Shown in pieces: positions 1,065-64,000 of a DNA stretch of 64,000 nt. The notes beneath the pieces were generated by a model. It saw only the letters and a list, made by a program, of their open reading frames with translations, did no database searches and was not told the origin of the DNA. Source of the stretch: Bigelowiella natans CCMP2755. Taxonomy: Eukaryota; Protista; Cercozoa. The DNA lies in assembly GCA_000320545.1 (NCBI GenBank), contig ADNK01002544.1:1-64000 (forward strand). Direction: 5' to 3'. The position numbers were made by a program, and so were the translations under genes. Position 1 is the stretch's first letter, and the number at the start of each line of letters is the position of its first letter.

Positions 1065-3605
1065 GACGGATGTGCAATGAAGTGATGCTAAATCTTTTCA
1101 ATGGTCATCCTAATCTAGCAACTTGTGGTGTCGCATGTGACACATCGCTATGTTGTGAAGGCACAGCAGCCTAGACAATTGTGCACGCACACACGCGCAT
1201 GCATGAGGTCATTAGCAGCTGCTAGAAAGTGGCGTGCGTGCACGCCAACTGCTAGACAACGCACAAATGCATTCGCGGCACACACGACACATGTGCATGC
1301 CACACATCTGTGCACATGCGATGGACAAATTTGGAACACTCGATGGTGAGACCTCAGAAAAGAAAAAATCTGAGGCATGCATCTCAAAATGGAGAAATGT
1401 TTGCAAACCACATCCATCAGACGAAAAAAAATCGAAATTTTCACAATGAAACCGAGAACTGGAGAAACACCTTCAGAGATGGAGAAGACAAAAAAGTTCA
1501 CAGCGACTCCTGTGATGGAGAATTCACCATGGAAGAGCCAAAAAAAATGCTCAATGCAATGTCTCCATGCAAGTCCCCAGGTGATGATGGTGTTCACCTC
1601 AATGTGCTGAAGAAAAGTGCCAAGTTGCACGAACTGTGGATGGAAGTCTTCAACACATCACGTGGATGGGGTGCTCGAGATCGTTCACGCAAAGCGGCCT
1701 TGTTTTGTCTCATTCCAAAACCTGGCAAAGAATTGAACACCCCTTGGAACGGAAGAACGATCCCCCTTCTCCAAATGGCTTCAAAAGTTGAAGACAAACT
1801 CATCGAACTTCGCCTCCGTGAAGCAATTCCACCGGAAAACATTGGCAAACATCAACATGCACTTGTGAAAAATGGATCTTGCGAAACAGCTTTGACCAAG
1901 ATGACACAGAGAATCGAAGATGGGGCACACAATGAAAAGCTTGCAGGTGCAATGTTGTTCACAGATGCCTCCAAAGCACATCCGAAGGCCTGGCATTCCG
2001 GCATGATGCGCAAATTGTGCGAAAAACATGAAATCAGGGGTTCCTTGTTGTCATGGATCGATGACTGGCTCAGAGATCGCACTGCCAGATTCAAACTTGG
2101 CAACACTGTGTCTGAGCACATGAATCTGGAGAGTGGAGTTCCAGAAGGCTCTTCCCTTGGCTGTTTTCCACTTGCAACGTGCCATGATGCACATGAATGC
2201 ATGAAAAGTGCTGATTTTCAAGTGCACTGTGATGATGTCACTCCATGCAAATCACTTTCTCCAAGGAGGTGGGGGAAAATGCAAAATGACATTCAGGAAG
2301 ACCTGACCAGAATGACAGAATGGTGCATGAAATGGCGGATGCGATTCAATGGAGACAAGAGCGGACATCCAATCATTGATGGAAGAAACACACCCCACCA
2401 ACGCCAAGCTTCGTGGAACATCAATCTGAATCTCCAAGGAAAGACAAAAAGGGTCGACAGCGGGAGGTGTCTGGGATTGGTCTTTGATGAAAGGCCAACC
2501 TTTGAAAAACGTGCTCTTGCTGCACACCTGAAGCTGCAGAAGAAGAGAAGGTTTTTGTCAAGATTGTGTTGTTCGAGATCCCTTGTGCCATCAAGTGTGA
2601 GATTGAAGTTTTGCAAATCATGGTTCATTGCGACCAGTGGTCAGTGGCTCCCACGTGGAGATCTCGAAAAAACTTGCGAACACAACAGGTGGATTCATTG
2701 GAATCACAAACTTTGAAAAGAATTTCAGGATCACCTGGCTCTGTTCCCAATGATGTGCCTCACGTTCTCAGCGGTGCACTGCCACCACGATGTCGTGCAA
2801 AAGTGCAATGTGCCAAGTCTTGGTTGCGCACTGGTGCTTGGATCAATGATGGTGATGGACGTGAAGCATGTGAAGAAATGTGCAATTGGAGCAGTTTTGG
2901 TTTTCACATTGAAGAATTCCAAAAACGCTGGAATGAAGCATCTCCACATCGCCGGCTCAGCTCAATTTCAAACGACTCACTGGATGATGAACCTCCTGCT
3001 GTTCTGACAACAAGAGAAGCACTCAAGAAAGATCTTGAGAAGCGCTCACAAAGTGATCAAATCCTCTGCATTCTCTGCCTTTGAGGAAGAATGGTCTGAT
3101 GATTTGGAGAGCCACGCAGCTGAAAAATCTTGGATTTCTCCCATCTTCTCAAATCACTGGCATCAGATCAAAATCACCAAGCATTGCAATCACATGGATG
3201 CGTGCCATTTGTGGGCTCGACAATCTTGGCAAATTCACGTTGTCCAGAGGACAATGTGAAGAAGCAGATGCCACACGTGACGTGTGTGGAGTCGTGAAAG
3301 ATGTGGATCATCTCCTTCAATGCGAGAAACACGAACATCAACAGCTCAGATTTCGCAATCAATTGAACGCACACCATCATGAATCGAAACGATGAGACAA
3401 AACTGCTTTCTGAGACAGAAAAAGAAGCAAGAACTGCTGCGCGCACTGCAAGACATCGACGACCGGATGTAGATGCTTTCAAATGCATGAAACACATGAT
3501 GGAAGAGACAAATAGATGCAACATGAGCGCTAGCTGTAGGCGCTGCTTTGCATAGCTACATTAGGATGACCATTGAAAAAATTTAATCAATTCATTACAT
3601 CCGTC
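1065..3605. mobile_element. Imperfect ~50-bp terminal inverted repeats (1065-1119 and 3555-3605) bracketing LINE copy A; probable non-autonomous DNA transposon hosting the LINE
   Basis: The reverse complement of 1065-1119 (GCTAGATTAGGATGACCATTGAAAAGATTTAGCATCACTTCATTGCACATCCGTC) aligns with 3555-3605 (GCTACATTAGGATGACCATTGAAAAAATTTAATCAATTCATTACATCCGTC). A third copy of the right end lies at 32130-32206. Confidence 0.7.
1320..3525 (+). mobile_element. 5'-truncated non-LTR retrotransposon (LINE) copy A: degenerate RT plus C-terminal zinc-knuckle region
   Basis: ORF 1310-2716 has LINE RT motifs (KSPGDDG, LIPKPGK, FTDASKAH, GVPEGSSLG, HCDD for YxDD, RCLGLVFD for KYLG). It continues through frameshifts in ORFs 2566-3084 and 3081-3395 (xDVCG..DVDHLLQC). 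It is collinear with the copy starting at ~61945. Confidence 0.95.
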
Positions 3606-12843: not shown

Positions 12844-12950
12844 CTGAAGCAGAAAAAGAGGCCAGAACTACTGCACGTACTGCACGACATCGACTACCGA
12901 AAACAGATGCTTTTAAATGCATGAAACATATAATAGAAGAGACAAAATAC
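12843..12950 (+). mobile_element. Short 3' fragment of the same LINE family that retains its TpA sites
   Basis: Aligns to ~3410-3515 (EKEARTxARTARHR...DAFKCMKH..EET) and directly follows a (TG)n tract. Confidence 0.85.
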
Positions 12951-13670
12951 GCGACTGAACACGTTTTCCACCATTGATCTGTGTCTGCTGAACTCCGTGT
13001 TCCATTGTCGTTGGGCTTGGGTGAGAGACTGGTTCCTCTTTTTTCTGTGTGGGCACATTGTTTCTGGGTCTTTTTTGCAAAGGTGAGCTCCATCCGCTCC
13101 TGTTCGTTCGAAAAATTTCATGCCCTCCAATGATCCATCTCTTCGGGTGATCGTCAAGTCTCCCTTTGATCCAGCTGGATCACCTTCAGACACCCAACAC
13201 AAGTCTCCAGTCGTGACACTGACTGCTGTTCCACATCTGCAAGCGAAAGACCTTCGCTTGAACGTCCAGTGCCTTTTTTGCTCCTCTTTGGTTGCAGGTT
13301 TGGTCACACAAAAATCGGCGCAGTCAGTCATCATGCTGCAGCACGATGCAGGACCATGGAGAATGATCCTGTCTTTGAACCTGTTTTCTTTCTTCACCTC
13401 ATTGTGTCTCACGACTGTGCCGAGTGTGCCCATCCCTGAAAGAGCTTTGTCAGCGCACGTTTGTCTGCAATGTCGCCACACAGCAGCTCCTTCTTCAGTC
13501 GTCGGATGTCTCCATGCAAAGTGTTGAGTCAACGTGCAATGTTCAATGCCCATCCCGTTCGGCTTTGCATGCCGAAAACACAAGTGCAAGAACTCATCCA
13601 TTGTCAACCCCACGATTGCCTTGAATGTGCCATGTCCACGTCTGAAGAAGTGACGCTTGAATGTCCTCAA
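12950..13670 (-). pseudogene. PIF/Harbinger (IS5-like, DDE_Tnp_4-type) transposase, 3'-truncated and hypermutated
   Basis: Motif series MTDCADF..KP, QKRHWTFK, GDLCWVS.GDPAGS..DLTI, GADGAH (ADxGY with Y>H), P.RK....LT..Q..WN..FS..R..VENVF. The frame runs into the LINE fragment just after the catalytic E. No Tyr occurs in the transposase part. Confidence 0.8.
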
Positions 13671-15143
13671 AACGTCAGTGTTTTGACACTCTGTGCAATT
13701 TCAAGGAAAAAAGTGACAATGACAAAAACAATGAACTGCAACAAAAATGACAATGAAAACACAAACAACAAAACAAAACAAAAAATTGAACAAGAACGAC
13801 CATTCATTTTTCCCCCAAAAAAATGAGTTTCCGAGCGCACAAAACGTGGAAGTGTCTCTGTGGTCGTCGGCACAGACCATTCTGGTGTGGCTTTGTGTTT
13901 GGCAACTGCGTGACCGACCTCCGTTGCAATGGGCGCACAGCCACGCGACCATGCCCGTTGCAATGTTTTCCAGCCACACAAAGTGACGCGTTGAAGATGT
14001 CCACACTGAAAGCACCTGAAAAAATGAGCAAGGTGCAAAGGCGCCAAAAACGATTTTTCAAAAGTTTCAAAAGGAACACTCAAAATGCCATGTCAAAGTC
14101 TCGTTTTGAAATTACAGAGAATCATGCCACGTTGTTGACAAGCGCACACTTGCATGTGCTGTGGACAAGCCGCTTGTGTGCATGCTTTGCACAGCATGCA
14201 TTAGCAATGTGCGCATTGCAAAAAGAGCTAATCACTTTGTTAAATCACGCGGTACAAAAAGGCCGGGCTGTGGACATGCAGCAAGCAAAACCTAGAAAAC
14301 GCGCATTGCTCATTGCTGTCATGGATGTAGACATCATTGCGCTGCGCTGCATGCGCTTTTGTGTGCACAGCTAGCACCGCATGTGCAAATAAATTGTTTC
14401 CTCAGCAGCGCTGCAAGGCATCTAGCAGCATGTACGCAATGCATTCTGCAAATTGCGGCTATGAAATCCATGCTAAGAATTTAAGCGTTTGTTTTGCATC
14501 ATGCGATGACATGTAAGCGCTGCGCCGCATGTCTAGATGTGATTACCACCGCAGCAAGCATGCTTTCAAATGCATGATCGAAAGACACACAATGCAAGCG
14601 ACTGTTAAACATGAGCGCGTGCGCTGCAGCATGTAATCGCTGCGCTGTTGTGCGATGGCTTTGCGCGCCAGGCATCGGATGACGCCATGCGCACATAGCA
14701 CATAACACACATAGATCGTATACATATAGTCACAGTATTTAGACATATTTGTAAATCCGATTTACATTTTACATTCATTTACATGTACACGACACTCTTT
14801 TGAACATGTACAATGTAGCATGTATGCAGCTAATGCATGCTTATCAGCGTCTTTTGTTACTCCAATAATGAGTCTTTTAATCACAGATTCAGAACGTGGG
14901 AAGTGGGCGCGGCGCGGAAACGTTGAGCGAAACAAGTGGGCGCGGAAAAGTTGAGCGAAACACCTTCCCTCCGAACACACGTGGGCAGTGTCAACAACTG
15001 CGCAATCGATCAGGCAAGTGCGCAAAACTCAAACGCGCTCAGCTCTCAGGTGTTTGCACTTCTCTGACCTCTCCAACCTTGACTCCAAGCCTCCGACCTG
15101 AACAAACTGGACCCAAACCAACCCCCGCAGAACGAAGTGGACT

Positions 15144-15830
15144 GTGGAAAACACGGAAGTGCTTCGAAAGGGGATTGCCATGGTTCCGGAGAATTGCCCA
15201 ACTCCTTGGAAGTGGATTGGCACCAACTCACTCAATGGAAAACTTGCGAGCGTCCAAGTGAGGAACAAAGCAACACGTTTGGATGTTGATCTGAAAAAAA
15301 GAAAGCAGCCAAAGTCTTCCGAGCACCCTCACAAACGATCCAGACCAAGCATTGAACCCCTCAAATCCTCAAAGGAGGAATTGAACAACGCGACAATGGA
15401 CTCGCGTTTGGATGACCTTGAAAAAATGTTGAACAATGGTCCCCAGCCTTTCAACTTGAAAGGAAGCGGGGGGACGTGGTTGATGTGGCAGAAAACACCA
15501 CCAATCAAGTGCCAATTTGTGATGGAGCCACTTCACAGCACGGTGGAGGTCAGAGCAACTTGCAAACCTCCAAAAATTGCAAAGGATTTGGGCAAATTCG
15601 GGAGAAAAGGGCAACAGGCCGGCGACACAAAAGACACATTGCGTTGCATCGATCGCCACTTCACCGGGAACGTGACACACAATTTCGCGACAACGGTGCC
15701 AGGTGACTTGCTCCTGACCTCTGCCACCTGTGCGAAAAATGACCATTGGGCAGGCGTGGATGTCCCATCAGTCACAAAAGAACAAACGATTCCAGGAGCG
15801 TCTGACGATGACGACGAACCAGACTTTTGA
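15144..15830 (+). pseudogene. Unknown 228-aa ORF inside the transposon block, possibly an accessory or cargo gene
   Basis: Protein-like composition with an acidic C-terminus (SDDDDEPDF) and no Tyr, oriented divergently from the transposase. No family recognised. Confidence 0.4.
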
Positions 15831-18735
15831 CAAACCCCTTCTCATCCCGTCATCCCCACGCGAATGAAGACTTCATTGCCTCGACCACCGCAGAGACAGA
15901 CGCCCACGTGTTTCCTGAACATTGAACAACCTGAGCTCGACACTGTGCACAAGGAACTGGTTGCATTGAAAGGTGATTTTTCTGTTCCTTCTTCGCGTGA
16001 GAGTGGTGATGACGAATGCGAACACTGTAACGGCGGAAAATTTTGGCAGAGACAGAAGCCGACACTGGGAGGATGCTCTCAGTGGTCGCAAACACGACGA
16101 TGATTGCGACCCACACGAGGCATCCGAGGACCACAAGAGCGGCGATTGCGACGACAGCAGCGCCACTCTCGGTTCCGCGGATTCTCTCTGCAGCTTGGCC
16201 TCTCGGCCCTCTGAATCTTCCTGTCGGCCCAGTGACGAGGAGAGTGTGATTTCCAACAACCGAAACGACAGCGGTTGTTGGGATGATTGCAGCAGCCAGA
16301 GGGCCCAGAGACCCACCCACAGAGAGAGAAAGGCTCTGGAGGCTGACGCAATTGACCTGATTTCATCGTCTGGATCATCGTCAGACGATGATGCCATTTT
16401 GTCATCCATGGGTTTCTGACAAAGCCCGCATCTGCACCACGAATCCTGATGCAACCATGTTGTGCACGTGCGTGAGCCAAACCTGCTGGCTGTGATGCAC
16501 TGCAGTGCACGCAGACGCGCGCGCGCCCGTCTGCCCGTCGTCTGGCCGTTGGAAAAGGATTGGCCGTCAGATCGGTGACAGTCGTCACAACTCGTGCTTC
16601 AATTGACACCCAATGGGCCCAATGCCGACTGACCGATTGCGCATGCACTTTGCCCCCTTCCCGCTCGATCAATTGTGAGCGTTGCGAATGGCACACGCTG
16701 GCACGCAACGCAAGCGCACAAAACGCAGCAAAGCGCTCGATGTCATCAGAGGCGAAGAGAAAGTGGCACGAATGTGAGGCACGCAGAAGCCACTTTGTGT
16801 CAAAACAAAAGTGCGAGATGGCTGGCCAGGTGCGCTGTCGTGAGGTGACAATGCGGTGAAATGAGCACATGCATGCTTCCCGCGCCCATCAAACCGACGT
16901 GCAATGATCAAAGGTCAACATCAACGACACATTGCGCCCTTTTGGCGCTGGAACGCGTGATTTGACAATGCCCATTGAAAACAAAACACTCAAACCCTGA
17001 TGATGAAAATGCATTGTGAGGAGCTTGAGCATGCATGCCAAAACAAGCTCCCAAGAGGACATTGCCGCTCGCACGCGGGTCTTTCAACTTCACCGCTCGC
17101 ACGCGGGTCTTTTGACTTTTGAGTGTGCGTTTCACTTTGCTTCAACTAGCTTGGTTGAACACATCACATCACGCCATTTTTGGATTGAAAAAACAACATT
17201 TTTTCCCAACATCATTTCGCTGACTTGTGCTGCAAAAGTTCCCTTTTGCAACCCAACTTTTTCCATGTCGCACTGGCCCAAGCGGGGCCAAAATGCCAAA
17301 ACTTGCCAACTGCTTTCGCACTGGCCCAAGCGGGGCCAAAATGCCAAACTTACCAACTCATTTTGTCCCCCCAGCATGATCTGACACACTGCTGCCAAAA
17401 CCAAACTACATCACAAATGCAAGCACACGCTTGGTGGTCATGACCGACCACACTGGTGGCAGCTGGAGTGGCCCAGATTGCCCAACATGAATGACGAAAA
17501 TTGCACTCTTCAGATTTGGGGTGAAATCAAAAAAAATTCCCTGGCTGACGCCGGCTAGCCGGGGCAAAACCGACGAACATGACACGGATCAAAAACCGGG
17601 GACTGAAACCCCCTTGCTAGCTTGCACCAGCTAGCCATGATGGACATGTAATGTGTTGTGCACATTGTGCATGCACCACATTGCTGTGTTGGAGTCCATT
17701 GTGAGCATTGCTGTGTCCATCACAGCCAGCTAACAGCTCACGCTAGCATGTGCAACTGCAAAATTGTGCAATGAACTCCAGAACTCAGCAGGTTAGCAAG
17801 GCACACATGTCCTCAAATGTCAAATGCGTTGCGATTGCATGCTCTCAAACAAATTAGTCATCACAAATGGTGCTGATCCAGCTGGTGGACAGTGGACACA
17901 TGCAAAACGAGGCAGTGCACATCAGATGCCTTTTATTCCATTGGTCGGAGCATTGTACGTGCAGATGTGCTTGTCGCATGTGACCCAGATCTCTCGTGGT
18001 GGTGCCTGGCTCATGCTTTGCGATCATGCAACAACGAGACACCAATGGTCAAAGTTCATTTGCAGAGTTTTAATTTCATCCACAATTAAATTATAAAGAT
18101 CATTTTGTGCTAGCATTTTACATTGGGTATGTTGTCTTATTCGTTTTGGGCACTTCTTTCGTCGTCGTCGTTTTAATTGTTCCCGTTCTCATCATCATCT
18201 CCAAGACCACCAGGAAGAATTGACCTACGGCAACAACGTAAGCATAGCATACAGGCACTTTAGAACTTGTACAGCACTGGACTTTGCCGCTTCTGCTAGG
18301 AGATAAAACTACGGATGCATGGCACAATAGAACAGTACGTACTACCTCAGGATTAAATGCAAAAAGGGTAATAAACACAGAAGAAAACATGACAACTGTA
18401 GATCATCTTTATGGCTGGAGCAATGAAACTATACGACAAAAGTACGGGATAATGATGATAACAATAATGATAAAAATTAGCAATGCTATATATGAGTTAT
18501 GGCAGTATTAACGACAGCAGTAACCTATCAATCCCCCGTGCTTTTTCTTCTTTCATCTATTAAAAACAAGGACAAAGACAACTCATACCACAATTCTCCC
18601 CTTTGTTATTTTCGTCCCTCATATGATCATCATAATCATCATTATTTATCATATCAGTGATGATGAATAAAGCAATTGGCTAGCAAGAAGTACCAATAAC
18701 TATTACAACATAACAGATGAATCGATGCATACAAC

Positions 18736-42652: not shown

Positions 42653-45280
42653 ATTTAGCCATAAATTATCAAGAAGGTATGGAGAAAAGGAAAGAATAAA
42701 TAGGAGGGGGTGCAAGATTTAGATAAACAAGCTGACTACCTCAGTAGGCGTTGTAGTAAGAGAAGGACTTAGGGTTGGGGTGATGCTAGGAGCAATAGTA
42801 TTAGGGTTTTTGGACGGTGCATTTGAAGGTGATATCGAGGGGGAGAGGGAGGGAGATGTTGAAGGACAATTCGTCGCTATTGAAGGAGAAATGGTTGGAG
42901 AAGGGGTAGGCGCATTTGTAGCTGCTCGATTTGGTTTTGGAGGGAAAATGATGGTATCCCAGTCGGATGAGCAGCAAAATTAGAGCAAAGACAAAGAGCA
43001 ACGAAATCAAGAAATTAAAACAAGTTTTAGGGCAATGATATAGTTGGCGAAATATTCATCTGATACATCTTCACACGCTTTTCGAATACTAAATGATCTT
43101 TAAACTTTCTCTCTTTGGTGATTTTCTTTGTGTTTGATTCTATTGCGAAGAATTGCAAGCATTGGTATTTTCTAAAAAATAAGAATAAAAAGATTAAGTG
43201 TGTACTGACAAAGAGTTGGGTTCTGAGAGGGGGAGGTAGATGCGGGAAGAGAGGGAGAAGCAGAAGGAGAACTCGTAGGAGTAGTTGTCAAAGGAGCTGC
43301 TGAATTTGGAGATGATGTGGGAGATACTGAAACTGGGCTGTCAGTAGGATTTGTGGTTGGAGATGAGGAAGGAAGAAGAGATGGTGACACACTTGAAACA
43401 GAGGGGCAGAGTGTGTTGGGAGAGGCAGAAGGGCTATGGGTTGGAGAGGTTGTTGTTGGTATCCTGCTCATCAAACAAACACACATCAGCATACTTAAGG
43501 AAAGGAAGAAGATGGGCATACACAATTCGAAACAATCATCAAGAATCCATCATCATCATCATCATCACCACCACCATCATCATTATACACAGTCCTCCTC
43601 TCTGCTCCTATTCCTCTTTCTTCTCCTCCTTCTCCTCCTCCTCCTCCCTTTGTGCATCATATATCTCCACCTTGTTGGTGAATGGGACGGACTTGATGAG
43701 GGTGCTATTGTCGTTGGATGGTGCGACTTTATAGTAGGAGATGTAGTTGGAATATTGGTTGGAGAATGTGTTGGAGATGACACCGGTGTAGCTGATGGAG
43801 AGCTACTGCTGGGATGCAGCGTTTGGGGACATTTTGTCGGTTGAATGGTTGGAGTGCTAGTCGGTACGTGTGTTGGAGATTTCGTTGATGGAGATGATGA
43901 AGGAGATAAGGGAGACCTGCTGGGTGAAAACGTTGGACACGCTGAAGGTTGATAACTAGGATTATTAGTCGGTGTGCTTATCGGTGATCTCGTAGATGGC
44001 GATGTTGAAGGAGAACTACTGGGTTGGAGAGTAGTAGGAAGCTTTGTTGGTGATATCGTAGAGGGTGATACCGAGGAGGGAGATTGGGAAGGATGAGGCG
44101 TGGGGTATTTCGTTGGCGAGTTGGTCTCTGGTGACGACGTAGGCCGATATGTAGGAGCTGCTGAAGGCTTGTATGTTGGAGTCTTTGTGGGTGCAGTTGT
44201 CAAAGGGCTTTTGGTTGGAACATCCGTAGGTGATGTTTGAGGATTTTGAGAAGGCGGGGGAGTGGGATATTTAGTAGGCGATGTTGTCGAAGGACTCAGA
44301 GAAGGCTCGAGGGTTATTGGCGCTTTTGTTGGGGAAAGTGTTGGATACTTTGTCGGTGATATTGTCTGCGGACTTTGAGTGGGTTGTTGAGTTGGAAAGC
44401 TAGTTGGCTCGGGTGTGGGAAACTTCGTAGGTGATGTTGTTTGAGGGCTCTGAGAAGGGTCGGGGGTAGGATATTTAGTAGGCGATATTGTCGAAGGACT
44501 CTGAGAAGGATGCGAAGTTGGGAAATTTGTAGGATCTGGTGTTGGGTACTTCGTCGGTGATATGGTTTGAGGACTCTGAGAAGGATGCGAAGTTGGGAAA
44601 TCTGTAGGGTTGGGTGTTGGATACTTCGTGGGCGACGTTGTCGAAGGACTCTGAGAAGGGTGTGGAGTTGGAAAGTTTGTGGGGTCAGGGGTTGGATACT
44701 TCGTCGGCGACGTTGTGTGAGGACTCTGAGAAGGGTGTGGAGTTGGAAAATTTGTGGGGTCGGGGGTTGGATACTTCGTCGGTGATATTGTGTGAGGACT
44801 CTGAGAAGGGTGTGGAGTTGGAAAATTTGTGGGGTCGGGGGTTGGATACTTGGTCGGCGATGTTGTGTGAGGACTCTGAGAAGGGTGTGGAGTTGGAAAA
44901 TTTGTGGGGTCGGGGGTTGGATACTTCGTCGGTGATATTGTGTGAGGACTCTGAGAAGGGTGTGGAGTTGGAAAATTTGTGGGGTCGGGGGTTGGATACT
45001 TTGTCGGCGATGTTGTGTGAGGACTCTGAGAAGGGTGTGGAGTTGGAAAATTTGTGGGGTCGGGGGTTGGATACTTGGTCGGCGATGTTGTGTGAGGACT
45101 CTGAGAAGGGTGCGGAGTTGGAAAGTTGGTCGGATCGGGTGTTGGATACTGCGTGGGCGAGGTTGTAAGAGGACTTCCAGAGGGTGCAGGCACAGGATTT
45201 CCCTTCGTTACACCCATGCTAATACCAATTATGATAAAGGACAACAATTGCATCGAAGGATGCGGCATCGTCCACAGCAT
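32893..45280 (-). CDS. Very large mucin-like surface protein: signal peptide, P/S/T repeat stalk, SEA-like segment, several TM helices, long low-complexity tail
   Basis: Hydrophobic N-terminus (MQLLSFIIIGISMGVTKG). PT/PS repeat exons span 38.5-45.2 kb. Exons at 37.8-38.3 kb include LACGSVLVAA. Hydrophobic exons at 37450-37540, 37170-37310, 36870-37090, 36630-36720 and 36240-36355. Phase-compatible hydrophilic exons run down to ~32893; joining of the tail exons is tentative. Confidence 0.65.
39470..41250 (-). repeat. Higher-order coding repeat of Cys-containing mucin units (PSxSP[ST]RCPT)
   Basis: Near-identical blocks of a few hundred bp are reused in varying order within ORF 38644-41307. 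Confidence 0.9.
44490..45150 (-). repeat. Coding tandem repeat, 75-bp unit (PHPSQSPHT[T/I]SPTKYPTPDPTNFPT)
   Basis: GAGGACTCTGAGAAGGG recurs at 75-bp spacing (44719, 44794, 44869, 44944, 45019, 45094). Confidence 0.95.
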
Positions 45281-57250: not shown

Positions 57251-58688
57251 TACGACGATGTTCTTCCATCACTGTGTTGTCTGTTAGTGACATTACAAAG
57301 ATACTTTGTGAAGTGTAACTGATATAAACGAGCTATAATTATGTTAATGGTGTGTTTTCTTTCCTTCCTCATGTGTTCATCATGTGAATAATGTCAGGAT
57401 GCACATCAAAATCTAAGAAGGAGCATCAGCGCAAGAAGAAGGCATCAGGAATAATGTATATAGCAAGGGGACAACTTGATGACCAAAATGACGGTATTAG
57501 CCATTTTGAATGAGTTTCATTGCACTAATAACATAGTAATATTCTCGTCGACGTCGGCCGAATGCCATGCATGTAGTGATCGCAGCGGGAAGAACTTTAT
57601 GCTGTATATATGCGCAACGTTTGTATGACTTCAATGCTAGAATGCTGCCAAATGGTCTAGTAGTGAATAACACGCGTGTAGCTAGCTCAATGGCCACGTC
57701 AAGATGCATGCTCTAATGAGTATGTCTAGATGTCTAGGACTGAATAGCCGCAATGGTGCCCAAACTCATTACCTACGGTTGTACGCGGTATGCGTGCTAT
57801 AATAAATACAACGCATGCATCGTGTGACAATCGCTGTCATTACAACCGCCAATAAAACGTGGGTAATCTTAGACCCGGCTAGCTGGCGGCTAACTTTTCT
57901 AGCTAACTAGATGTGCACACAATCTAGCAACATGCACAGCTGAAAATTATCACTATAAGATCACTAGCTAGCTAGATCACAAAAAAATGCAAAGTCGTCA
58001 TTCACGCATGCGATTTTTTGGGGGCGCTAAGTAAATTGTGAACATTTGCCTTCTCTAGTACGTCCTCTGGCATCATTGCGGTGTGAGTCTGTTTTTGTGC
58101 ATTTCACGGCACATTTGGCCTAGCAGCGCGCAGACTAGCAGCTGACGAGCTAGCGAGGGCGATCAGCACATGCATTGCACGCACTAGTGCATGACATTGC
58201 ATGTCTGTGCATGCTTGCCTCTTTTTCTGCGTTGGTTAGTAGCTTTGTTTCATCGTTTCGATTCACAATGGCGTTCAATTGATTGCGAAATCTGCGTGAG
58301 CTGTGGGTGTTCGCATGCCAGCATGTCTCGCATTGCGCAGGAGATGATCCATGCCAGCATGTCTTTCACGACACCACACAGATCATGTGAAATGATGGAC
58401 ACACATGCACATGCAACTGTCACATTTTGACCAGAATTTGTCCATTTTGCGCACGCAAATTCTGCACAAACATTGTCTGTGCGCGGGCAACATGACGCGA
58501 ACGAAGCAACAGCATGCAGCAGCATCGCAGCAGAGCCAACTGATGCACGCAAATGTGACTTGCAAGGCTGCAGGAGGCACATCAGAAGGCATTTTTGATG
58601 GGTCATTTGGAGCGATTTCAAGCACCTCGCATGCATGCTAGCAGCGCCTCACGGGCACCAAAATCATTTTGCGAGCTCACAATGACCT

Positions 58689-59118
58689 CACAAGTCCGTC
58701 AAACCTGCAACGAATCGCCAGAATGTGCATTTGGAAGCTTTTGCGCGCGACCAAGCGCGTCACAATGTGATGCGACAGAGATTGGATTTGCTCGCATTTC
58801 TTTGAAATTTTTCGTGCATGTCACATTTGGTCACACGCACACGCAAAAACATTCAAAATGTGGCAGAGAACAAACGCGCAGCGTGCATCCGCTACACAAC
58901 GGGTGTGGCTTTTCACACTTTGCGCGCTCACTGAGGCCTTGAAAATGGACATTTTGGTCAACATTTCGGTCATTTTTTGAGGTTTGGCCATCGGACAAGT
59001 TCTGATGACTTTTCTTTGACTGACTGCAACTGCCTGCTAGCCTGCATGCTGCTTCAAAGCGCGTCGCAAGCGCTGCACTGTTCACAACCCCGTCGTTGCC
59101 GGGTTTGACGGACTTGTG
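58689..59118. mobile_element. ~430-bp MITE-like element with ~26-bp TIRs
   Basis: CACAAGTCCGTCAAACC-TGCAACGA (58689-58713) matches the reverse complement of 59093-59118 (CACAAGTCCGTCAAACCCGGCAACGA). The right end is partly duplicated at 59119-59131. Confidence 0.75.
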
Positions 59119-59131
59119 TGACGGACTTGTG

Positions 59132-59218
59132 CATGTGTTTCATTCATGCATTTGAAGGCTAGAAGGCATCCACATCCGGTTGTCGATGTCATGCAATGAG
59201 CGGCAGCAGTTCTTGATT
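59132..59218 (-). mobile_element. Inverted 3' fragment of the LINE family
   Basis: The reverse complement reads CAAGAACTGCTGCCGC...GACATCGACAACCGGATGTGGATGCCTTC...AAATGCATGAA, matching ~3428-3495. Confidence 0.75.
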
Positions 59219-59257
59219 GTGGACACAGTAATAGCACATGCATTATGTGCATGATCG

Positions 59258-59301
<44 letters not shown>

Positions 59302-59346
59302 CAAACGGACTCATGGCCGCGCACAAGTGAAACATTGCCCACCGTG

Positions 59347-60776
59347 ATGATCACGCGCAGCGCGCGTGGCAACAACAAGCACCAGACACCCAAAAAGGGA
59401 AGAAAGCACAAAAAGAACCAACACGCAACGTTGGATCTCGATTCAGAATGCAATGATGACGACTGTGGCTCTGACAGGAAAAGTCATGATCTGTCTCAAT
59501 GCCTTCGCGAAGTTACTTCAACACTGTCTGCAACAATGGAACGCAAAGAAACTCCTCAGTGGAACACAATGAAAAAATTGTGTGAAATGCTGACCACAAT
59601 GGTCCAGTTAGTTGATGAGAAACAACAACAATTGCAGCAAGATCAAAAAGACATGCAGGAGGAAAACGCTGGGCTTGAAAACAAATTGCTGAAACTTGAA
59701 GAAGAACTGACTTGCATCAAGGAACATCAGAAGAATGGCACAATGGAAGCTCAACCCTCCTCGATGCAACGGACCTCGAGAACTTGCGCTAGTGTCACAA
59801 CCTCATCACGCGCTGATGAACCTCATGGTCGAGATGAATGTCCTGAAGCAGAAGTACAAAGACTAGCTGAGCGAAAGAATGGCCAGAGTTGGCAAGTTCC
59901 AAAAAGTCACGCCAGGAATCAAAGGAAATGCAACCGGAAGTATGAACAGAACGTGCTCATGTTGGAACTTGACAAAAAAGCCATGCTGCAAGCGGGGGGC
60001 GCCATTGTGGCCTCCGGCGACCCATGTCGCACTGTTCTCACTGGCAAAAAAAACATGCCAACGAACCAACAAGTGAGGAAACAAACACAGCAGATCCGAG
60101 GGATGAAAACCGCGACACACTGACAGAAGTTAACACCGAGGAAGAAGAGACTAAATGCCTAGCCGGAAAGAACGTAGAGGATTTGAACCCATCCAGTGAA
60201 AAAAAAGATGTTCCAGATATTGGGAAAAACCTGTCCAAAATAACTCCAAAGTTGATCGATGCACTAGGATTGAACGAATTCCAAATGCACGTAGCTTTCC
60301 AAGCGAAATATGGGAAGGACTTTCAAGGAATCCAATTCAAATCTAGGAATAAAACCCACCTAAAAGTGTTCTTCAAAGGCTCCAGAGAATCTAAGATGGA
60401 TGCTTACCTGGATCTGCTTAACACCGAACATCAGTTAGGACAAGGATCATTCCTTCCCTCACTCTTTGGATTAGTGACCACAGTCAGAGCAGCTAAGTCA
60501 AGGCCAAGTAAGCACTCTGTAGTTCTGAGAGGCCCAAGGCTGGGACCTAACGAGCAGGAAAAATCAACACGAATTGGAATCATCAAGCAGATAATCGAAA
60601 CCAACATCGATGTAAAAGTCGCAGCAATAGAACCTCTCGGCAAGGGCCCTCTACTTCAGCTGTTTGTGCACTCGCATGAAGAGGCCACCAAACTGCTGAA
60701 TTCACAAATCACATATCAGGGCAGCTACCTACGATTCAGGGCATATGAAAACAGAAGGACACGTAAATATGGTTAA
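59347..60776 (+). pseudogene. LINE ORF1 (coiled-coil nucleic-acid chaperone) with one frameshift
   Basis: Starts MITRSAR and has a Q/E/L-rich coiled coil. ORF 59245-60123 shifts to ORF 60024-60776, probably at the A run near 60046-60053. Confidence 0.75.
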
Positions 60777-63700
60777 TCATTTGAATCTCCCCTACTACTA
60801 CCAAAACATACGCAGTAAAAACGGAACTGAACAAGGCAGGCAAAGAATAAATAGAAGATATAATATGTTAAAAGAAATGATAACCACCAACAACATCGAA
60901 CTCGCCTGGTTTGGGGAAGGCCGCCTCAAAGAATCGGAGAGGCTGCATCCTCCAGCGGGATACGAAGTGATTCGGACGAGCGGCTCCTCTGGGAGCTTTG
61001 GATTAAGAAAAAAGAACACAGATATAATTCATATACCTATAGATGATAACAATTACGATATTAGTTTTTTCATACACAGCATTGAAAAATATGCTGTCAT
61101 AATGGTGTACCTCCAGCCACACCAAAACATCTCACATCTGAAAGAGAGATTAGATTTCATAATGAACATCATTCGGAAACAGAAATGGAAAAAATACATC
61201 ATCGTGGGGGACACTAATGCTAAACACTCCACCTACGATGTCCGAAACCAAGAAGATAGACGTGGCAGATACCTACACCAGTGGTTGTCGGATAACAACA
61301 TCATGATGGTCAACCCTGGGGAAGCCACATATTTCAGAAAAGGAAACACAAGCACACTTGATCATGTGCTGTGCTCCTCAAACTTCGCACACCAAATAGA
61401 ATATCAGATGGCCAACACCACGACAAGTGACCATTTCGGTATCCACTTTGGAAAACCTGTGGCAATCCATCAACAGACTTCACCAATGATATATGACATC
61501 GACAAATTCGATGTAAAACGATTTGACGAAAAATTGAATAATATTACCGAACGCTTGCACCAGCGCATACTAAACGTTCAATCGGAGGCTGATGCAAAAA
61601 AGCTTGAACGCTGGTTCTGGGACTTTACCGGAAAAGCTTTTAATAGCTGCACACCAAAAAAACGACAACGTTGGAGTCCAATCAAGCCATACCAAAACGA
61701 CAAAAAATATAAATCCATCAAAGATCAACAAGAAAAATTATTTAGATCCTTGAAACACGAAAGGAAATTTCGGAAGAGAAAATTATTAGAAACCAAGATC
61801 CAAGAAATCAACACCGAACTTGAACGAACCACCGAAACCCTTCAGTACGAAGCATGGCAATTATTCTTGTCTCGCTTCGAAAAATACAACAATGGGAATC
61901 ATACCAGAATGCTGTACAAATTATTCCAAAAATCCAGAGGGCGGGATAAATTCGGAGGACTCGATGGCGAAACCTCTGAAGAAAAAAAATGTGAAGTGTG
62001 TGTTGCCAAATGGAAACATATCTACAAACCACACCCGTCAGACAAGAAAAATCGAACCTTTCACGCTGAAACTGAGGCCTGGAGAAATACCTTCAGGAAA
62101 AATGAAGACAAAAAGATCCACAGTGTTAATTCACACAACAGAGATTTTTCCATGCATGAACTAAGAAACGTGATCAACAAAGCATCACCGTACAAGTCTC
62201 CTGGCGATGATGGTGTTCACCTAAACATGTTGAAAAAAAGCAAGAAACTCCATCAACTGTGGTTAGCTACATTCAACACGTCATGTAGATGGGGTACCCG
62301 AGATGGCTCACGCAAGGCGGCCATTTTTTGTCTCATCCCTAAGGCCAACAAAGAACTTGACACCCCTCTCAACGGGAGAACGATTTCTCTCCTACAAATA
62401 GCTTCAAAAATGGAAGACAAACTAATAGAACAACGGCTCCGCGAAGCTATACCCCCCAAAAACATCAGCACACATCAGCATGCATTCATGAAAAATCGAT
62501 CCTGCGAAACTGCACTCACAAAGATGACGCAGTCAATCGAGGATGGAGTGTGTGACAAAAAGCTTGCAGCCATCCTGTTGTTTACAGATGCCTCTAAAGC
62601 TCATCCAAAAGCCTGGCATTCCGGCATGATGCGCAAGTTACATGACAAACACGGAACACGAGGCTCGCTATTGCTGTGGATCGACGACTGGCTCAGAGAT
62701 CGTACCGCCAGATTCAGATTTGGCAATGCTCTCTCTGAGCACATGAACCTTGGGAGCGGCGTCCCCGAAGGATCATCTCTCAGCTGTTTCCTGTTCACAA
62801 CCCATTGCGACATTTACGAACATGTTGCCAACACAGATTTCCAAATGTGCTGTGACGACGTTGCCCCCCACAAATTGTTTTCGCCAAACCGATGGGGGAA
62901 AATGCAAGATGATGTCCAGGCCGACCTAAACCAAATGACGGACTGGTGCATGAAATGGCGGATGCGATTCAATGGGGACAAGAGCGGGTGCCTTGCAATT
63001 GACAAAAGAAACAAAGCCCACCGACACCAAACCTCCTGGAACATCTCTCTCAATCTCCAAGGAAAAATGAAAAGAGTCGACAGCGGCAGATGTCTCGGAC
63101 TGATCTTCGACAACAAATTGACCTTTGAAAAACATGCTCTTGCTTCTCACCTGAGATTGCAAAAGAAGCGAAGGTTTTTGTCAAGGTTGTGTTGTTCCAG
63201 ACACCTTGCACCGCTAAACGTCAGACTGAAATTTTGCAAATCATGGTTCCTTGCATCCAGCAGATGCGCTGCTCCAATGTGGAGATCACGAAGAAACACA
63301 CGAATGAAACAGATGGATTCCATGGAATCCCAAACCCTGAAACGCACATTGGGATCACCTGGATCCATCTCCAACGACGTCCCCCACGTCCTCACTGGCA
63401 CGTTGCCACCCCGATGTCAAACTGAAGTGCAGTGTGCTGAATCATGGTTGCGCACCAACGCATGGATCGACACAGGCAGCGGTCCTCAAATCCATGAGGG
63501 AACAAATGATTGGAGCAGTTGTGGCTTCATCATTGAAAATCGAAAAATGTTGGATGGCACATCGTGGATTGATGTGGCCACACACACGTGGAACAAAGCA
63601 TCCTTGTTTCGACGGCTCAAATCGATCACTGACGACTTGTTAGGTGACGAATTGCCCACCGTTTTGGCGACAACAGAGGCGCTGAAAAAAGAACTGAAAA

Positions 63701-64000
63701 AACATCACAAGGTGATGAAATCTTGTGCTTTCAACGAATTCGAAGAGGAATGGTCCAATGATTCATTGCGCGCTGTGCATCTCAAGAATCTTGGTTTCCT
63801 CCCGTCATCTTCGATCACCGGCATCAAACTGAAACTTCCAAGTGTTGCTACATCGTGGATGCGCGCCATCTGTGGTGTCGGCAATCTTGGCAAATTCATG
63901 CTGTCACGTGGACAATGCACAGAGGAAGATGCCACGTGCGATGCATGTGGCATCCTGAAGGACATGGATCATCTCCTGCAATGTCCAATGCATGGTCGAG
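60769..64000 (+). CDS. LINE ORF2: APE endonuclease + reverse transcriptase + CCHC knuckle; open to the window end but RT motif mutated
   Basis: Absent from the supplied ORF track, probably because it has no stop in the window. Manual translation from ATG 60769 (overlapping the ORF1 stop) is uninterrupted: YYQNIRS, IVGDTNAKH, TLDHVLCS, SDHFGI (APE); KSPGDDG, DASKAH, GVPEGS, CCDD, RCLGLIFD (RT); CDACG..DMDHLLQC. Confidence 0.95.
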   Translation, partial: MVNHLNLPYYYQNIRSKNGTEQGRQRINRRYNMLKEMITTNNIELAWFGEGRLKESERLHPPAGYEVIRTSGSSGSFGLRKKNTDIIHIPIDDNNYDISFFIHSIEKYAVIMVYLQPHQNISHLKERLDFIMNIIRKQKWKKYIIVGDTNAKHSTYDVRNQEDRRGRYLHQWLSDNNIMMVNPGEATYFRKGNTSTLDHVLCSSNFAHQIEYQMANTTTSDHFGIHFGKPVAIHQQTSPMIYDIDKFDVKRFDEKLNNITERLHQRILNVQSEADAKKLERWFWDFTGKAFNSCTPKKRQRWSPIKPYQNDKKYKSIKDQQEKLFRSLKHERKFRKRKLLETKIQEINTELERTTETLQYEAWQLFLSRFEKYNNGNHTRMLYKLFQKSRGRDKFGGLDGETSEEKKCEVCVAKWKHIYKPHPSDKKNRTFHAETEAWRNTFRKNEDKKIHSVNSHNRDFSMHELRNVINKASPYKSPGDDGVHLNMLKKSKKLHQLWLATFNTSCRWGTRDGSRKAAIFCLIPKANKELDTPLNGRTISLLQIASKMEDKLIEQRLREAIPPKNISTHQHAFMKNRSCETALTKMTQSIEDGVCDKKLAAILLFTDASKAHPKAWHSGMMRKLHDKHGTRGSLLLWIDDWLRDRTARFRFGNALSEHMNLGSGVPEGSSLSCFLFTTHCDIYEHVANTDFQMCCDDVAPHKLFSPNRWGKMQDDVQADLNQMTDWCMKWRMRFNGDKSGCLAIDKRNKAHRHQTSWNISLNLQGKMKRVDSGRCLGLIFDNKLTFEKHALASHLRLQKKRRFLSRLCCSRHLAPLNVRLKFCKSWFLASSRCAAPMWRSRRNTRMKQMDSMESQTLKRTLGSPGSISNDVPHVLTGTLPPRCQTEVQCAESWLRTNAWIDTGSGPQIHEGTNDWSSCGFIIENRKMLDGTSWIDVATHTWNKASLFRRLKSITDDLLGDELPTVLATTEALKKELKKHHKVMKSCAFNEFEEEWSNDSLRAVHLKNLGFLPSSSITGIKLKLPSVATSWMRAICGVGNLGKFMLSRGQCTEEDATCDACGILKDMDHLLQCPMHGR

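What the first reader, a model, noticed from the sequence alone, without database searches (positions are those of the whole stretch)
60130..62450. Unmutated island in the middle of a hypermutated LINE: clue to the targeting rule
Seen: within one element, the 5' part (59300-60120) and the 3' part (from ~62460, nearly complete after ~62900) are TpA-poor. The ORF1 end, APE domain and linker keep normal TA and Tyr content (YYYQN, KKYII), with graded transitions. The 3' mutated zone lies within the part shared with 5'-truncated copy A, which starts at the equivalent of ~61945. The 5' zone abuts another depleted TE block. Known: 5' truncation makes LINE 3' ends the highest-copy part. Inference: targeting depends on copy number or homology (as in RIP or small-RNA guidance), or spreads a limited distance from nucleation sites. 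It also shows the element's native composition is TA-rich, which serves as an internal control.
Basis: partly seen in the sequence, partly recalled or inferred. Interest (0 to 1): 0.85.

Follow-up and report, generated by a model that had tools for sequence, protein, structure and literature searches.

The report
Half-mutated LINE copy with untouched middle
One young retrotransposon copy in what is very probably the alga Bigelowiella natans has had the TA steps at both ends rewritten to TG or CA while its 2.1-kb middle is untouched, which shows how this alga's recently reported TA-specific mutator chooses its targets.

Summary
The LINE (window 59301 to contig position 64261, bracketed by an 11-bp target-site duplication) has about 12 near-identical sister copies. 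Against them, this copy differs almost only by TA>TG or TA>CA. 16 of 21 ancestral TA sites are converted at 59314-60006, 0 of 103 at 60131-62127, 17 of 36 at 62134-62727 and 35 of 38 at 62798-63520. Only 7 of 4555 other positions differ.

The process is the TpA-specific A:T>G:C hypermutation reported for B. natans in a 2026 preprint. This scan has met it before on other DNA of this genome.

New here:
- The island is not immune; other copies are saturated across it.
- Repetition alone is not the trigger; about 12 identical full-length copies are clean.
- Saturated copies stop at their own element edges and taper within 150-300 bp of them.
- Clean sisters carry stray hits only at 63193-63520 and 64182-64190, and the family's ends are already TA-eroded, so the ends are hit first.
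- In the graded zone fast contexts are converted and slow ones are not, a sign of partial exposure in place.
- Strand choice is independent from site to site.

Copy depth tracks TA loss only in the 3' half. The 5' tract lies in the lowest-copy part. Phasing by reads was not possible.

The parts
59246..59256 (+). Left copy of the 11-bp target-site duplication (GTGCATGATCG). The right copy lies just past the window, at contig 64262-64272.
   Evidence: The same 11-mer stands before the A run and directly after the LINE 3' end, so 5' end and 3' end belong to one insertion.
59257..59300 (+). Run of about 44 A (plus a C) between the left duplication and the LINE 5' end. These are extra nucleotides at the 5' junction.
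   Evidence: Two sisters checked (C2179, C3306) carry 5-7 extra bases at the same junction.
59301..64000 (+). Young full-length APE+RT LINE. It continues to contig position 64261, for 4961 bp in all.
   Evidence: Pfam PF14529 and PF00078. 11-12 sisters are 98.3% identical overall and about 100% identical in the island. The 3' end was defined by more than 30 copies.
59347..60776 (+). ORF1. It is 486 aa and uninterrupted in sisters. Here it is frameshifted by an A8/A9 homopolymer difference at about 60046-60053, which one sister (L005) shares.
   Evidence: the insertion row at 60045.
60745..64000 (+). ORF2, open for 1179 codons with the stop at contig 64237-64239. It is still open but carries 42 amino-acid changes (Y>C 10, Y>H 6, I>M 6, I>T 6). 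The APE domain at 61093-61443 is unchanged. The RT domain at 62338-62994 has 22 changes, including YCDD>CCDD at 62848-62859.
59314..60007. 5' hypermutated tract. 16 of 21 ancestral TA sites are converted (12 scored as TA>TG and 3 as TA>CA). Fast contexts 13/14, slow contexts 2/7. The two CTAG sites are spared.
60008..62133 (.). Unmutated island. 0 of 103 ancestral TA sites are converted (0 of 62 fast-context sites). It holds one private non-TA change (61813, G>A at a CpG).
62134..62727 (.). Graded zone. 17 of 36 TA sites are converted, with fast contexts at 15/21 and slow contexts at 2/15.
   Evidence: (Fisher p = 0.0008; the context classes were defined on other copies).
62798..63520 (.). Saturated 3' zone. 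35 of 38 TA sites are converted (fast 22/22, slow 13/16). 63193-63520 is also the only stretch, apart from two sites in the tail, where otherwise clean sisters carry stray conversions (24 of 302 site-copies).
63521..64000 (.). TA-poor tail inherited by the whole family. It runs to 64261 and holds 5 TA in 741 bp in clean sisters (TA o/e 0.10, TG 1.80, CA 1.51). It was not made in this copy.
58238..59256 (.). Older TA-depleted block abutting the LINE 5' end. It contains a 430-bp high-copy repeat (58689-59119) that is TA-poor in every copy examined. Parts of the rest (58214-58389 and 59132-59218) resemble, in reverse orientation, the sequence at and just beyond the end of copy A's aligned part.
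1323..3322 (+). Copy A, a 5'-truncated and saturated member of an older subfamily. It is 71% identical to 61944-63983.

Best explanation
The island is the unexposed interior of a recently inserted, full-length LINE. The copy has been partly processed, in place on the chromosome, by the TpA-specific A:T>G:C hypermutation already reported for Bigelowiella natans.

Exposure in this copy is domain-like. One domain covers the 5' 0.7 kb. Another covers the 3' 2.1 kb and is strongest at 62800-63520. Both decay over roughly 100-300 bp at their inner edges, and the 2.1 kb between them received less than about 1/50 to 1/300 of the dose.

Shown here:
- The changes are private to this copy.
- They hit both strands, site by site and independently.
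- They follow context-dependent kinetics.
- The island is not intrinsically protected.
- Repetition alone does not trigger the process.
- Fully mutated copies are bounded by their own element edges.
- The family is hit from its ends inward, above all from the 3' end.

Inferred, not shown:
- A locus-specific, switch-like mutable state is set up on individual copies. It could be a chromatin or small-RNA-guided state.
- It is nucleated preferentially near the 3' end and, separately, at the 5' end or from the neighbouring old mutated block.
- It spreads only a short way, and in time fills the whole element.
- A DNA adenine deaminase then acts on TpA within that state.
For: Signature and privacy of the changes:
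- There are 68 conversions at ancestral TA sites, against 7 differences at 4555 other positions.
- No other copy in the genome shares these conversions. The best non-self matches are clean sisters at 98% (5' tract) and 96% (3' tract).
- Conversions are 42 TG to 26 CA. Runs tests give z about 0 in all 10 mutated copies.

One intact insertion:
- An 11-bp target-site duplication brackets the whole element.

The island is not immune:
- Copies C3251, C1487, C574 and C2777 are saturated across island-equivalent sites.

Repetition is not sufficient:
- About 12 full-length copies are clean.

Element-bounded tracts:
- TA density returns to normal within 0-200 bp of the edges of saturated copies.
- Conversion is 78% in the first 150 bp of five truncated copies and 99% beyond 600 bp (p = 8e-7).

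Ends are hit first:
- Stray hits in clean sisters number 24 of 302 site-copies at 63193-63520, 3 of 118 in the tail, 1 of 239 in the 5' part and 0 of 2129 in between.
- Clean sisters already have eroded ends.

Partial exposure in place:
- In the graded zone, fast contexts are converted 15/21 and slow contexts 2/15 (p = 0.0008).

Same process as published:
- The preprint reports only A>G and T>C, only at TpA, in integrated DNA during a mutation-accumulation experiment, and in only some lines.
Against: - No read-level phasing across the two boundaries was possible. All available runs are kept as contigs, which drop rare variants, and at most private sites only the sister allele was laid.
- The 5' edge is abrupt, as a recombination breakpoint or an assembly join would be.
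- The window copy is the only mosaic among about 25 informative copies, so 'ends first' rests partly on sparse stray hits. Some of those are shared between sisters by descent.
- Copy depth and distance from the 3' end are confounded along the element, so copy-number guidance of the 3' domain is not excluded.
- There are no chromatin, small-RNA or expression data.
Confidence: 0.7

Rival explanations
1. Copy-number or homology guidance. The dose at each position follows how many homologous copies or derived small RNAs exist, so the 5'-truncation gradient makes the 3' end the main target.
For: - The depth proxy is flat from 59300 to 62100 and rises from about 62120, where the tract starts. Spearman rho is 0.77-0.86 over the 3' half in three runs.
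- Candidate places number 39 for the island, 64-67 for the 3' tract and more than 40 for the last 260 bp.
- Stray hits in sisters sit in the highest-copy part that still has TA sites.
Against: - The 5' tract is in the lowest-copy part (19 candidates).
- The island has 12 or more perfect homologues yet is untouched.
- All sisters share the same copy-number landscape and stay clean.
- Truncated copies taper at their own 5' edge regardless of element position.
- The published giant-virus target is single-copy.
- Bins along the element are autocorrelated, and contig depth is a poor measure of copy number (warning).
Confidence: 0.12
2. Gene-conversion or ectopic-recombination patch. The copy was once mutated throughout, and its middle was later overwritten from a clean sister.
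For: - The island is identical to the sisters apart from one base.
- The 5' boundary is abrupt, falling between 60007 and 60131.
Against: - The 3' boundary alternates many times between converted and unconverted sites over 600 bp. The unconverted sites are the kinetically slow contexts, which a context-blind conversion tract would not produce.
- The family-wide ends-first pattern predicts this mosaic without any conversion event.
Confidence: 0.08
3. Assembly chimera. The middle of this copy was filled with reads from clean sister copies.
For: - There are twelve or more identical 5-kb repeats, and several contigs end inside LINE copies.
- Independent runs gave no contig that bridges a boundary.
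Against: - The target-site duplication shows one full-length insertion.
- No orphan contig with a young mutated island exists among all 39 island matches.
- The island carries a private CpG>CpA change at 61813 that is absent from all 12 sisters.
- The graded zone follows context kinetics.
- Window-allele contigs at about single-copy depth are present in independent runs, at 59944/59961 in X1 and at 62134/62151 in X12. The second pair lies right at the 3' boundary.
- No deletion joint from about 60100 to about 62100 appeared in any run.
Confidence: 0.05
4. Editing before integration, of the LINE RNA or of its first-strand cDNA during target-primed reverse transcription. This would give a gradient anchored at the 3' end.
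For: - The changes are private to this insertion.
- The dose is highest near the 3' end, which is copied first.
Against: - Both strands are hit, in interleaved order and without strand-coordinated runs.
- A separate 5' tract exists.
- The published process acts on long-integrated DNA during culture.
- Edge tapering occurs at truncation points.
Confidence: 0.05

Closest known systems
TpA-specific A:T>G:C hypermutation of integrated viral DNA in Bigelowiella natans (Mettrop et al., bioRxiv 10.64898/2026.01.13.699255)
   Same: - Almost only A>G and T>C changes.
- Only at TpA, and on both strands.
- Regional, and orders of magnitude above background.
- Aimed at foreign or mobile DNA.
- Switch-like: seen in only some lines there, and in only some copies here.
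- That paper also finds reverse-transcriptase and endonuclease-RT domains enriched among TpA-poor coding sequences.
   Different: - The paper describes a 186-kb giant-virus region and a 25-kb virophage region.
- A text search of it finds no mention of retrotransposons, boundaries, small RNA or CTAG.

This locus adds:
- a single 5-kb element with an untouched interior;
- per-site ancestral states taken from sisters;
- element-bounded tracts with edges of 150-300 bp;
- an ends-first order of attack;
- context kinetics;
- independence of strand choice between sites.
Repeat-induced point mutation (RIP) of Neurospora and other fungi (from general knowledge)
   Same: Dinucleotide-specific transition hypermutation that cripples transposons in the genome, sometimes with leakage into the flanks.
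   Different: - RIP changes C:G to T:A at CpA and so creates TpA. Here TpA is destroyed.
- RIP is triggered by duplication and hits the duplicated copies. Here about 12 identical copies are clean and a single-copy virus is a target.
- RIP makes stop codons. This process cannot create a stop in a sense codon: it only turns TAA into TGA and removes TAG, so ORF2 stays open.
APOBEC3-type cDNA editing and ADAR-type dsRNA editing of retroelements (from general knowledge; PMC4866542 for APOBEC footprints in LTR elements)
   Same: - Deaminase-like transition clusters recorded in retroelement copies.
- ADAR prefers a 5' U, which matches the TpA motif.
   Different: Those act on one strand of an intermediate and leave strand-asymmetric footprints. 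Here both strands are hit in random order, after integration.
Somatic hypermutation by AID (from general knowledge)
   Same: A deaminase-driven mutable domain of 1-2 kb whose intensity decays with distance from a start point.
   Different: AID targets C in WRC motifs, depends on transcription and acts on immunoglobulin genes. No transcription data exist here. The only hint is the TG excess in the 5' tract (12:3).

Membership tests
B. natans TpA hypermutation (Mettrop et al. 2026) | Almost exclusively A>G / T>C transitions | tested here: met
   There are 68 TA-site conversions to TG or CA, against 7 other differences in 4555 positions.
B. natans TpA hypermutation (Mettrop et al. 2026) | Mutations fall only on TpA dinucleotides | tested here: met
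   Every private transition in the tracts lies in an ancestral TA. The exceptions are 61813 (at a CpG), 62793 (T>G), 63855 (A>G in CATG) and three sites that are polymorphic among sisters.
B. natans TpA hypermutation (Mettrop et al. 2026) | Both strands are affected (TpA>TpG and TpA>CpA) | tested here: met
   42 TG to 26 CA in the window copy, interleaved, with runs-test z = -0.29.
B. natans TpA hypermutation (Mettrop et al. 2026) | Sharp local elevation over the genomic background | tested here: met
   68% of TA sites are converted in the tracts, against 0 of 103 in the island and 0.15% at non-TA positions.
B. natans TpA hypermutation (Mettrop et al. 2026) | Acts on DNA already integrated in the chromosome | tested here: inconclusive
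   - Supported indirectly: the changes are private to this insertion, there is no strand coordination, and there is a context-kinetic gradient with edge tapering.
- Direct proof exists only for the viral regions in the paper.
B. natans TpA hypermutation (Mettrop et al. 2026) | The organism is Bigelowiella natans | not testable with these tools
   - Genomes and runs are unnamed or coded.
- The assembly has 91.4 Mb. The paper's callable genome of 85.0 Mb is stated to be 90% of the genome.
- The mutational signature is identical.
- Earlier scan notes reached the same identification.
RIP (fungal repeat-induced point mutation) | C:G>T:A at CpA, enriching TpA | tested here: not met
   The direction is the reverse: TpA is lost and TG and CA are gained.
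RIP (fungal repeat-induced point mutation) | Triggered by sequence duplication; the repeated copies are mutated | tested here: not met
   About 12 identical full-length copies are essentially clean. The island is repeated 12 or more times yet is untouched.
Pre-integration editing of retroelement RNA or cDNA (ADAR / APOBEC type) | Strand-asymmetric footprint | tested here: not met
   Both directions occur and are randomly interleaved in all 10 mutated copies.
APE-type LINE (non-LTR retrotransposon) | Apurinic-type endonuclease plus reverse transcriptase in ORF2, an ORF1, target-site duplication, 5'-truncated copies | tested here: met
   - PF14529 (6.5e-18) and PF00078 (2.7e-14).
- ORF1 of 486 aa and ORF2 of 1179 aa in a sister.
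- An 11-bp target-site duplication.
- Many copies with a shared 3' end and varied 5' starts.

The most novel reading that the evidence does not exclude
The TpA mutator is aimed by a graded signal intrinsic to the element, for example small RNAs or transcripts concentrated at LINE ends. This signal sets up mutable chromatin domains of 1-2 kb with edges of about 150-250 bp on individual copies, in a switch-like way. Active LINE lineages survive by carrying ends already stripped of TA, which would be an arms race written into transposon codon usage. This locus would then be a natural reporter, with a built-in control, for dissecting the guidance step of a new eukaryotic genome-defence system based on DNA adenine editing.
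Probability: 0.3. Interest if true: 0.75.

Novelty: new member of a known kind. Interest (0 to 1): 0.55.

Why it matters
The TpA hypermutation of B. natans was described only in 2026, and only for two integrated viral regions. How it picks its targets is unknown.

This LINE family supplies ancestral states site by site. It also supplies copies at every stage: clean, a few 3' hits, this mosaic, and saturated. From these come concrete constraints on targeting:
- It is not repeat-induced in the RIP sense.
- It is bounded by the element.
- It is domain-like, with short edges.
- It starts at the ends, above all the 3' end.
- It shows a roughly nine-fold context effect on rate.
- It shows no strand processivity.

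The data also show a distinctive way of disabling genes. The process makes only missense changes (Tyr to Cys or His, Ile to Met or Thr, and loss of the RT catalytic Tyr). It cannot create new stop codons. Mutated elements therefore look like intact ORFs and can mislead annotation.

The mosaic copy is a ready-made test locus for long reads, mutation-accumulation lines, small-RNA profiling and chromatin profiling.

Tried and rejected
- **Fetching more copies.** Later searches returned tables only. Copies C255, C1920, C778, C814, C607, C994, C1883 and C160 could therefore not be read.
- **Read-level phasing.** All 24 runs are kept as contigs. The laid contigs are dominated by the sister allele and drop the single-copy branch at most private sites. 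Neither boundary could be bridged. Depth served only as a rough proxy, against the tool's own warning.
- **Independent assemblies.** A look-up of the window-specific 292-aa ORF found nothing on record.
- **Strand-coordinated clusters.** I looked for runs as a sign of a single-stranded intermediate and found none.
- **Shared descent with C584.** The window and C584 agree in conversion direction in the 5' tract (11 of 13, p = 0.02). C584 differs at 14% of non-TA positions, so I rejected shared descent. I attribute the agreement to a sense-strand or site bias.
- **Copy A as the determinant of the 3' tract.** Rejected. Copy A is 71-73% identical, belongs to an older subfamily, and its homology starts 190 bp before the tract.
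- **The 60045 indel as a join artefact at the 5' boundary.** Rejected. It is an A8/A9 homopolymer difference that sister L005 shares.
- **CTAG sparing.** Only 2 informative sites exist in young copies (0 of 2 converted) plus two spared sites in the window tract. That is too few to add to earlier notes.
- **Method note.** Column majorities of the sister copies were used inside scripts only to call the ancestral state of each TA site.
Full report
**What is there**

The window shows discrete stretches with almost no TA and an excess of TG and CA. Between 59301 and the window end lies a LINE with an apurinic-type endonuclease and a reverse transcriptase. Matches of more than 30 copies place its 3' end at contig position 64261, 261 bp past the window.

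An 11-bp target-site duplication stands at 59246-59256 and again directly after the 3' end. The 5' and 3' parts therefore entered as one 4961-bp insertion. In a sister copy ORF1 (486 aa) and ORF2 (1179 aa) are uninterrupted.

**Checking the observation against sister copies**

The same genome (91.4 Mb, 3736 contigs) holds about 12 copies that are essentially identical to the window copy over 60130-62450 and 98.3% identical overall. An alignment of the window copy with 40 copy fragments gives 203 ancestral TA sites. The window copy's state by zone is:

| Zone | TA sites converted |
|---|---|
| 59314-60006 | 16 of 21 |
| 60131-62127 | 0 of 103 |
| 62134-62727 | 17 of 36 |
| 62798-63520 | 35 of 38 |

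Practically every private difference is TA>TG or TA>CA. Only 7 of 4555 non-TA positions differ.

Two corrections apply. First, the TA poverty of 59304-60130 and of 63521-64261 is partly or wholly inherited by the family. Clean sisters have TA o/e of 0.41 and 0.10 there, against 0.65-0.72 in between. Second, the 5' edge is abrupt, while the 3' edge is graded.

**What process it is**

Earlier notes of this scan pointed to a 2026 preprint, which I read. In a mutation-accumulation experiment, Bigelowiella natans accumulated almost exclusively A>G and T>C changes in two integrated viral regions. All fell at TpA, at about 1000 times the background rate, and only in some lines. The paper also found reverse-transcriptase domains enriched among TpA-poor coding sequences.

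The signature here is the same. The scan has found this process before on other DNA of this genome. The phenomenon itself is therefore known.

**Are the changes made in this copy?**

No other place in the genome shares the window's conversions. The best non-self matches to the 5' and 3' tracts are clean sisters, at 98% and 96%. The direction of conversion agrees with other saturated copies at only 50-62% of shared sites in the 3' part. The changes are private to this insertion.

**Is the island protected by its sequence, or by low copy number?**

It is not protected by its sequence. Copies C3251, C1487, C574 and C2777 are saturated right through the island-equivalent sites.

Repetition is not a sufficient trigger either. 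The island exists in 12 or more perfect copies, and those full-length sisters are clean.

A rough depth proxy from public runs is flat from 59300 to about 62100 and rises from about 62120 to the 3' end. It correlates with the converted fraction over the 3' half (rho 0.77-0.86). Candidate counts rise in the same direction: 39 for the island, 64-67 for the 3' tract and more than 40 for the last 260 bp.

Both quantities simply run along the element, however, and the tool warns against reading contig depth as copy number. The 5' tract also lies in the lowest-copy part (19 candidates). In addition, the published giant-virus target is single-copy. Copy number may modulate the process, but it does not define the target.

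**What does define the pattern?**

- *Element bounds.* Saturated copies return to normal TA density within 0-200 bp of their element edges.
- *Tapering at each copy's own edge.* In five 5'-truncated saturated copies with different truncation points, conversion is 78% in the first 150 bp, 93% at 150-300 bp and 99% beyond 600 bp (p = 8e-7). The dose tapers at each copy's own edge.
- *A 3' hot zone.* In otherwise clean sisters, stray conversions occur at 63193-63520 (24 of 302 site-copies, 14 distinct events, some with opposite directions at the same site) and at 64182-64190 (3). There is 1 in 239 in the 5' part and 0 in 2129 site-copies between 60131 and 63182. Together with the inherited TA-free tail and the eroded 5' end, this shows a family-wide order of attack from the ends inward, above all from the 3' end.
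- *All-or-nothing states.* For 62700-63560, copies are either at least 99% or at most 96% identical to the clean state. Once begun, the process appears to run quickly to saturation, which makes a mosaic copy rare.

**Kinetics**

Using only other copies to define contexts, ATAT, ATAA, TTAA, ATAC and ATAG convert almost always. CTAA, CTAC, GTAC and GTAA lag (83-96%).

In the window's graded zone, fast contexts are converted 15/21 and slow ones 2/15 (p = 0.0008). This is what partial exposure in place predicts. A context-blind conversion tract or a mixed assembly consensus would not give it.

Treating conversion as first-order gives these rough doses for fast sites (inference from the counts):

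| Zone | Dose (fast sites) |
|---|---|
| 62798-63520 | about 14 |
| 62466-62727 | about 2.4 |
| 62134-62450 | about 0.7 |
| 5' tract | about 2.6 |
| Island (0 of 62) | below 0.05 |

With the preprint's numbers (211 mutations, 6169 TpA, 3132 generations) the rate is about 1e-5 per TpA per generation. Saturation would then take about 1e5 to 1e6 generations, a time in which neutral divergence stays far below 0.1%. This is an inference. It fits the youth of this copy and of the saturated copy C1853 (0.42% non-TA divergence).

**Strand behaviour**

TG and CA outcomes are interleaved, with no excess of runs in any of 10 mutated copies. Double conversions to CG are rare. Each TpA is therefore hit once, on either strand, independently of its neighbours. 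This argues against a single exposure of one strand, such as cDNA or RNA editing before integration.

The 5' tract leans to TG (12:3). The clean family's 5' end has TG o/e 1.84 against CA 1.16. This may point to a sense-strand bias near the 5' end. I did not pursue it.

**Consequences for the element**

ORF2 stays open over all 1179 codons but carries 42 substitutions, mostly Tyr>Cys or His and Ile>Met or Thr. The catalytic YCDD has become CCDD, and the endonuclease domain is untouched. The mutation type cannot create stops in sense codons. It only turns TAA into TGA and removes TAG, which explains the long spurious ORFs in TA-free blocks.

**Rivals**

*Assembly chimera.* Not excluded by reads, since only contigs were available and they drop the rare branch. 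Several things argue against it:
- the target-site duplication;
- the absence of any orphan contig with a young mutated island among all 39 island matches;
- a private CpG>CpA change at 61813 inside the island;
- the context kinetics;
- window-allele contigs at about single-copy depth at 59944/59961 and at 62134/62151 in independent runs;
- no deletion joint across the island.

*Gene-conversion patch.* It fits the abrupt 5' edge, but not the context-sorted 3' edge or the family-wide pattern.

*Pre-integration editing.* It fails on strand symmetry.

**Verdict**

The finding is real and gives a rare intermediate state of a known, recently described process. The copy-number rule is at most a modifier of the 3' domain. 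The guidance mechanism itself, whether chromatin state or small RNA, is inferred and not shown.

Noticed in passing
window 58689-59119: A 430-bp repeat with at least 186 candidate places in the genome. All 11 copies examined (88-92% identical to the window's) hold only 0-6 TA in about 405 bp. The family seems to have spread after being stripped of TA, or from a TA-poor source.
   Followed up: partly
window 59257-59300: A run of about 44 A lies between the left target-site duplication and the LINE 5' end, not at its 3' end. Two sisters checked (C2179, C3306) have 5-7 extra bases at that junction. The element itself ends without a poly(A) tail.
   Followed up: no
G000 contig C255 about 96788-98334 (not fetched): A cluster of rearranged LINE pieces. 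It holds the last 261 bp (minus strand), 62983-63254 (plus strand), and a mutated 5' 817 bp (minus strand; 97% to a clean sister, 95% to the window) that ends near position 60118. That is close to the window's 5' boundary. The cluster has no island sequence.
   Followed up: no
window 44457-45175: A tandem array of a 75-bp unit, 9.6 copies at 89% match, on the G-rich strand. It explains the CA o/e of 0.27 in that kilobase.
   Followed up: no
window 1224-3513, 12935-14202, 14867-17351: Three further stretches of 1.3-2.5 kb with only 2-3 TA each and balanced TG and CA excess. The first is copy A of an older LINE subfamily.
   Followed up: partly
window 59304-60130 and sister copies: There is a sense-strand bias at the LINE 5' end. 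The window's 5' tract has 12 TA>TG to 3 TA>CA, and clean sisters have TG o/e 1.84 against CA 1.16 there. In the rest of the element the two directions are closer to even (30:23 in the 3' tract).
   Followed up: partly
all mutated copies of the family (alignment): When the two strands of a TA site offer different neighbours, the A in T-T-A-C is chosen 71% of the time and the A in G-T-A-A 29%. So the base two positions upstream influences which strand is edited.
   Followed up: partly
window 60046-60053: A8 in the window and in one sister, against A9 in the other sisters. This shifts the ORF1 frame, and public runs show the A9 form as dominant. It may be a real polymorphism or a homopolymer error.
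   Followed up: partly
contig C1193 64262-64560 (locus L031): The DNA directly after the LINE, which was continuous with the old TA-free block before the insertion, has about normal TA density (4-5 per 100 bp). The LINE therefore landed at the edge of an older mutated tract.
   Followed up: partly
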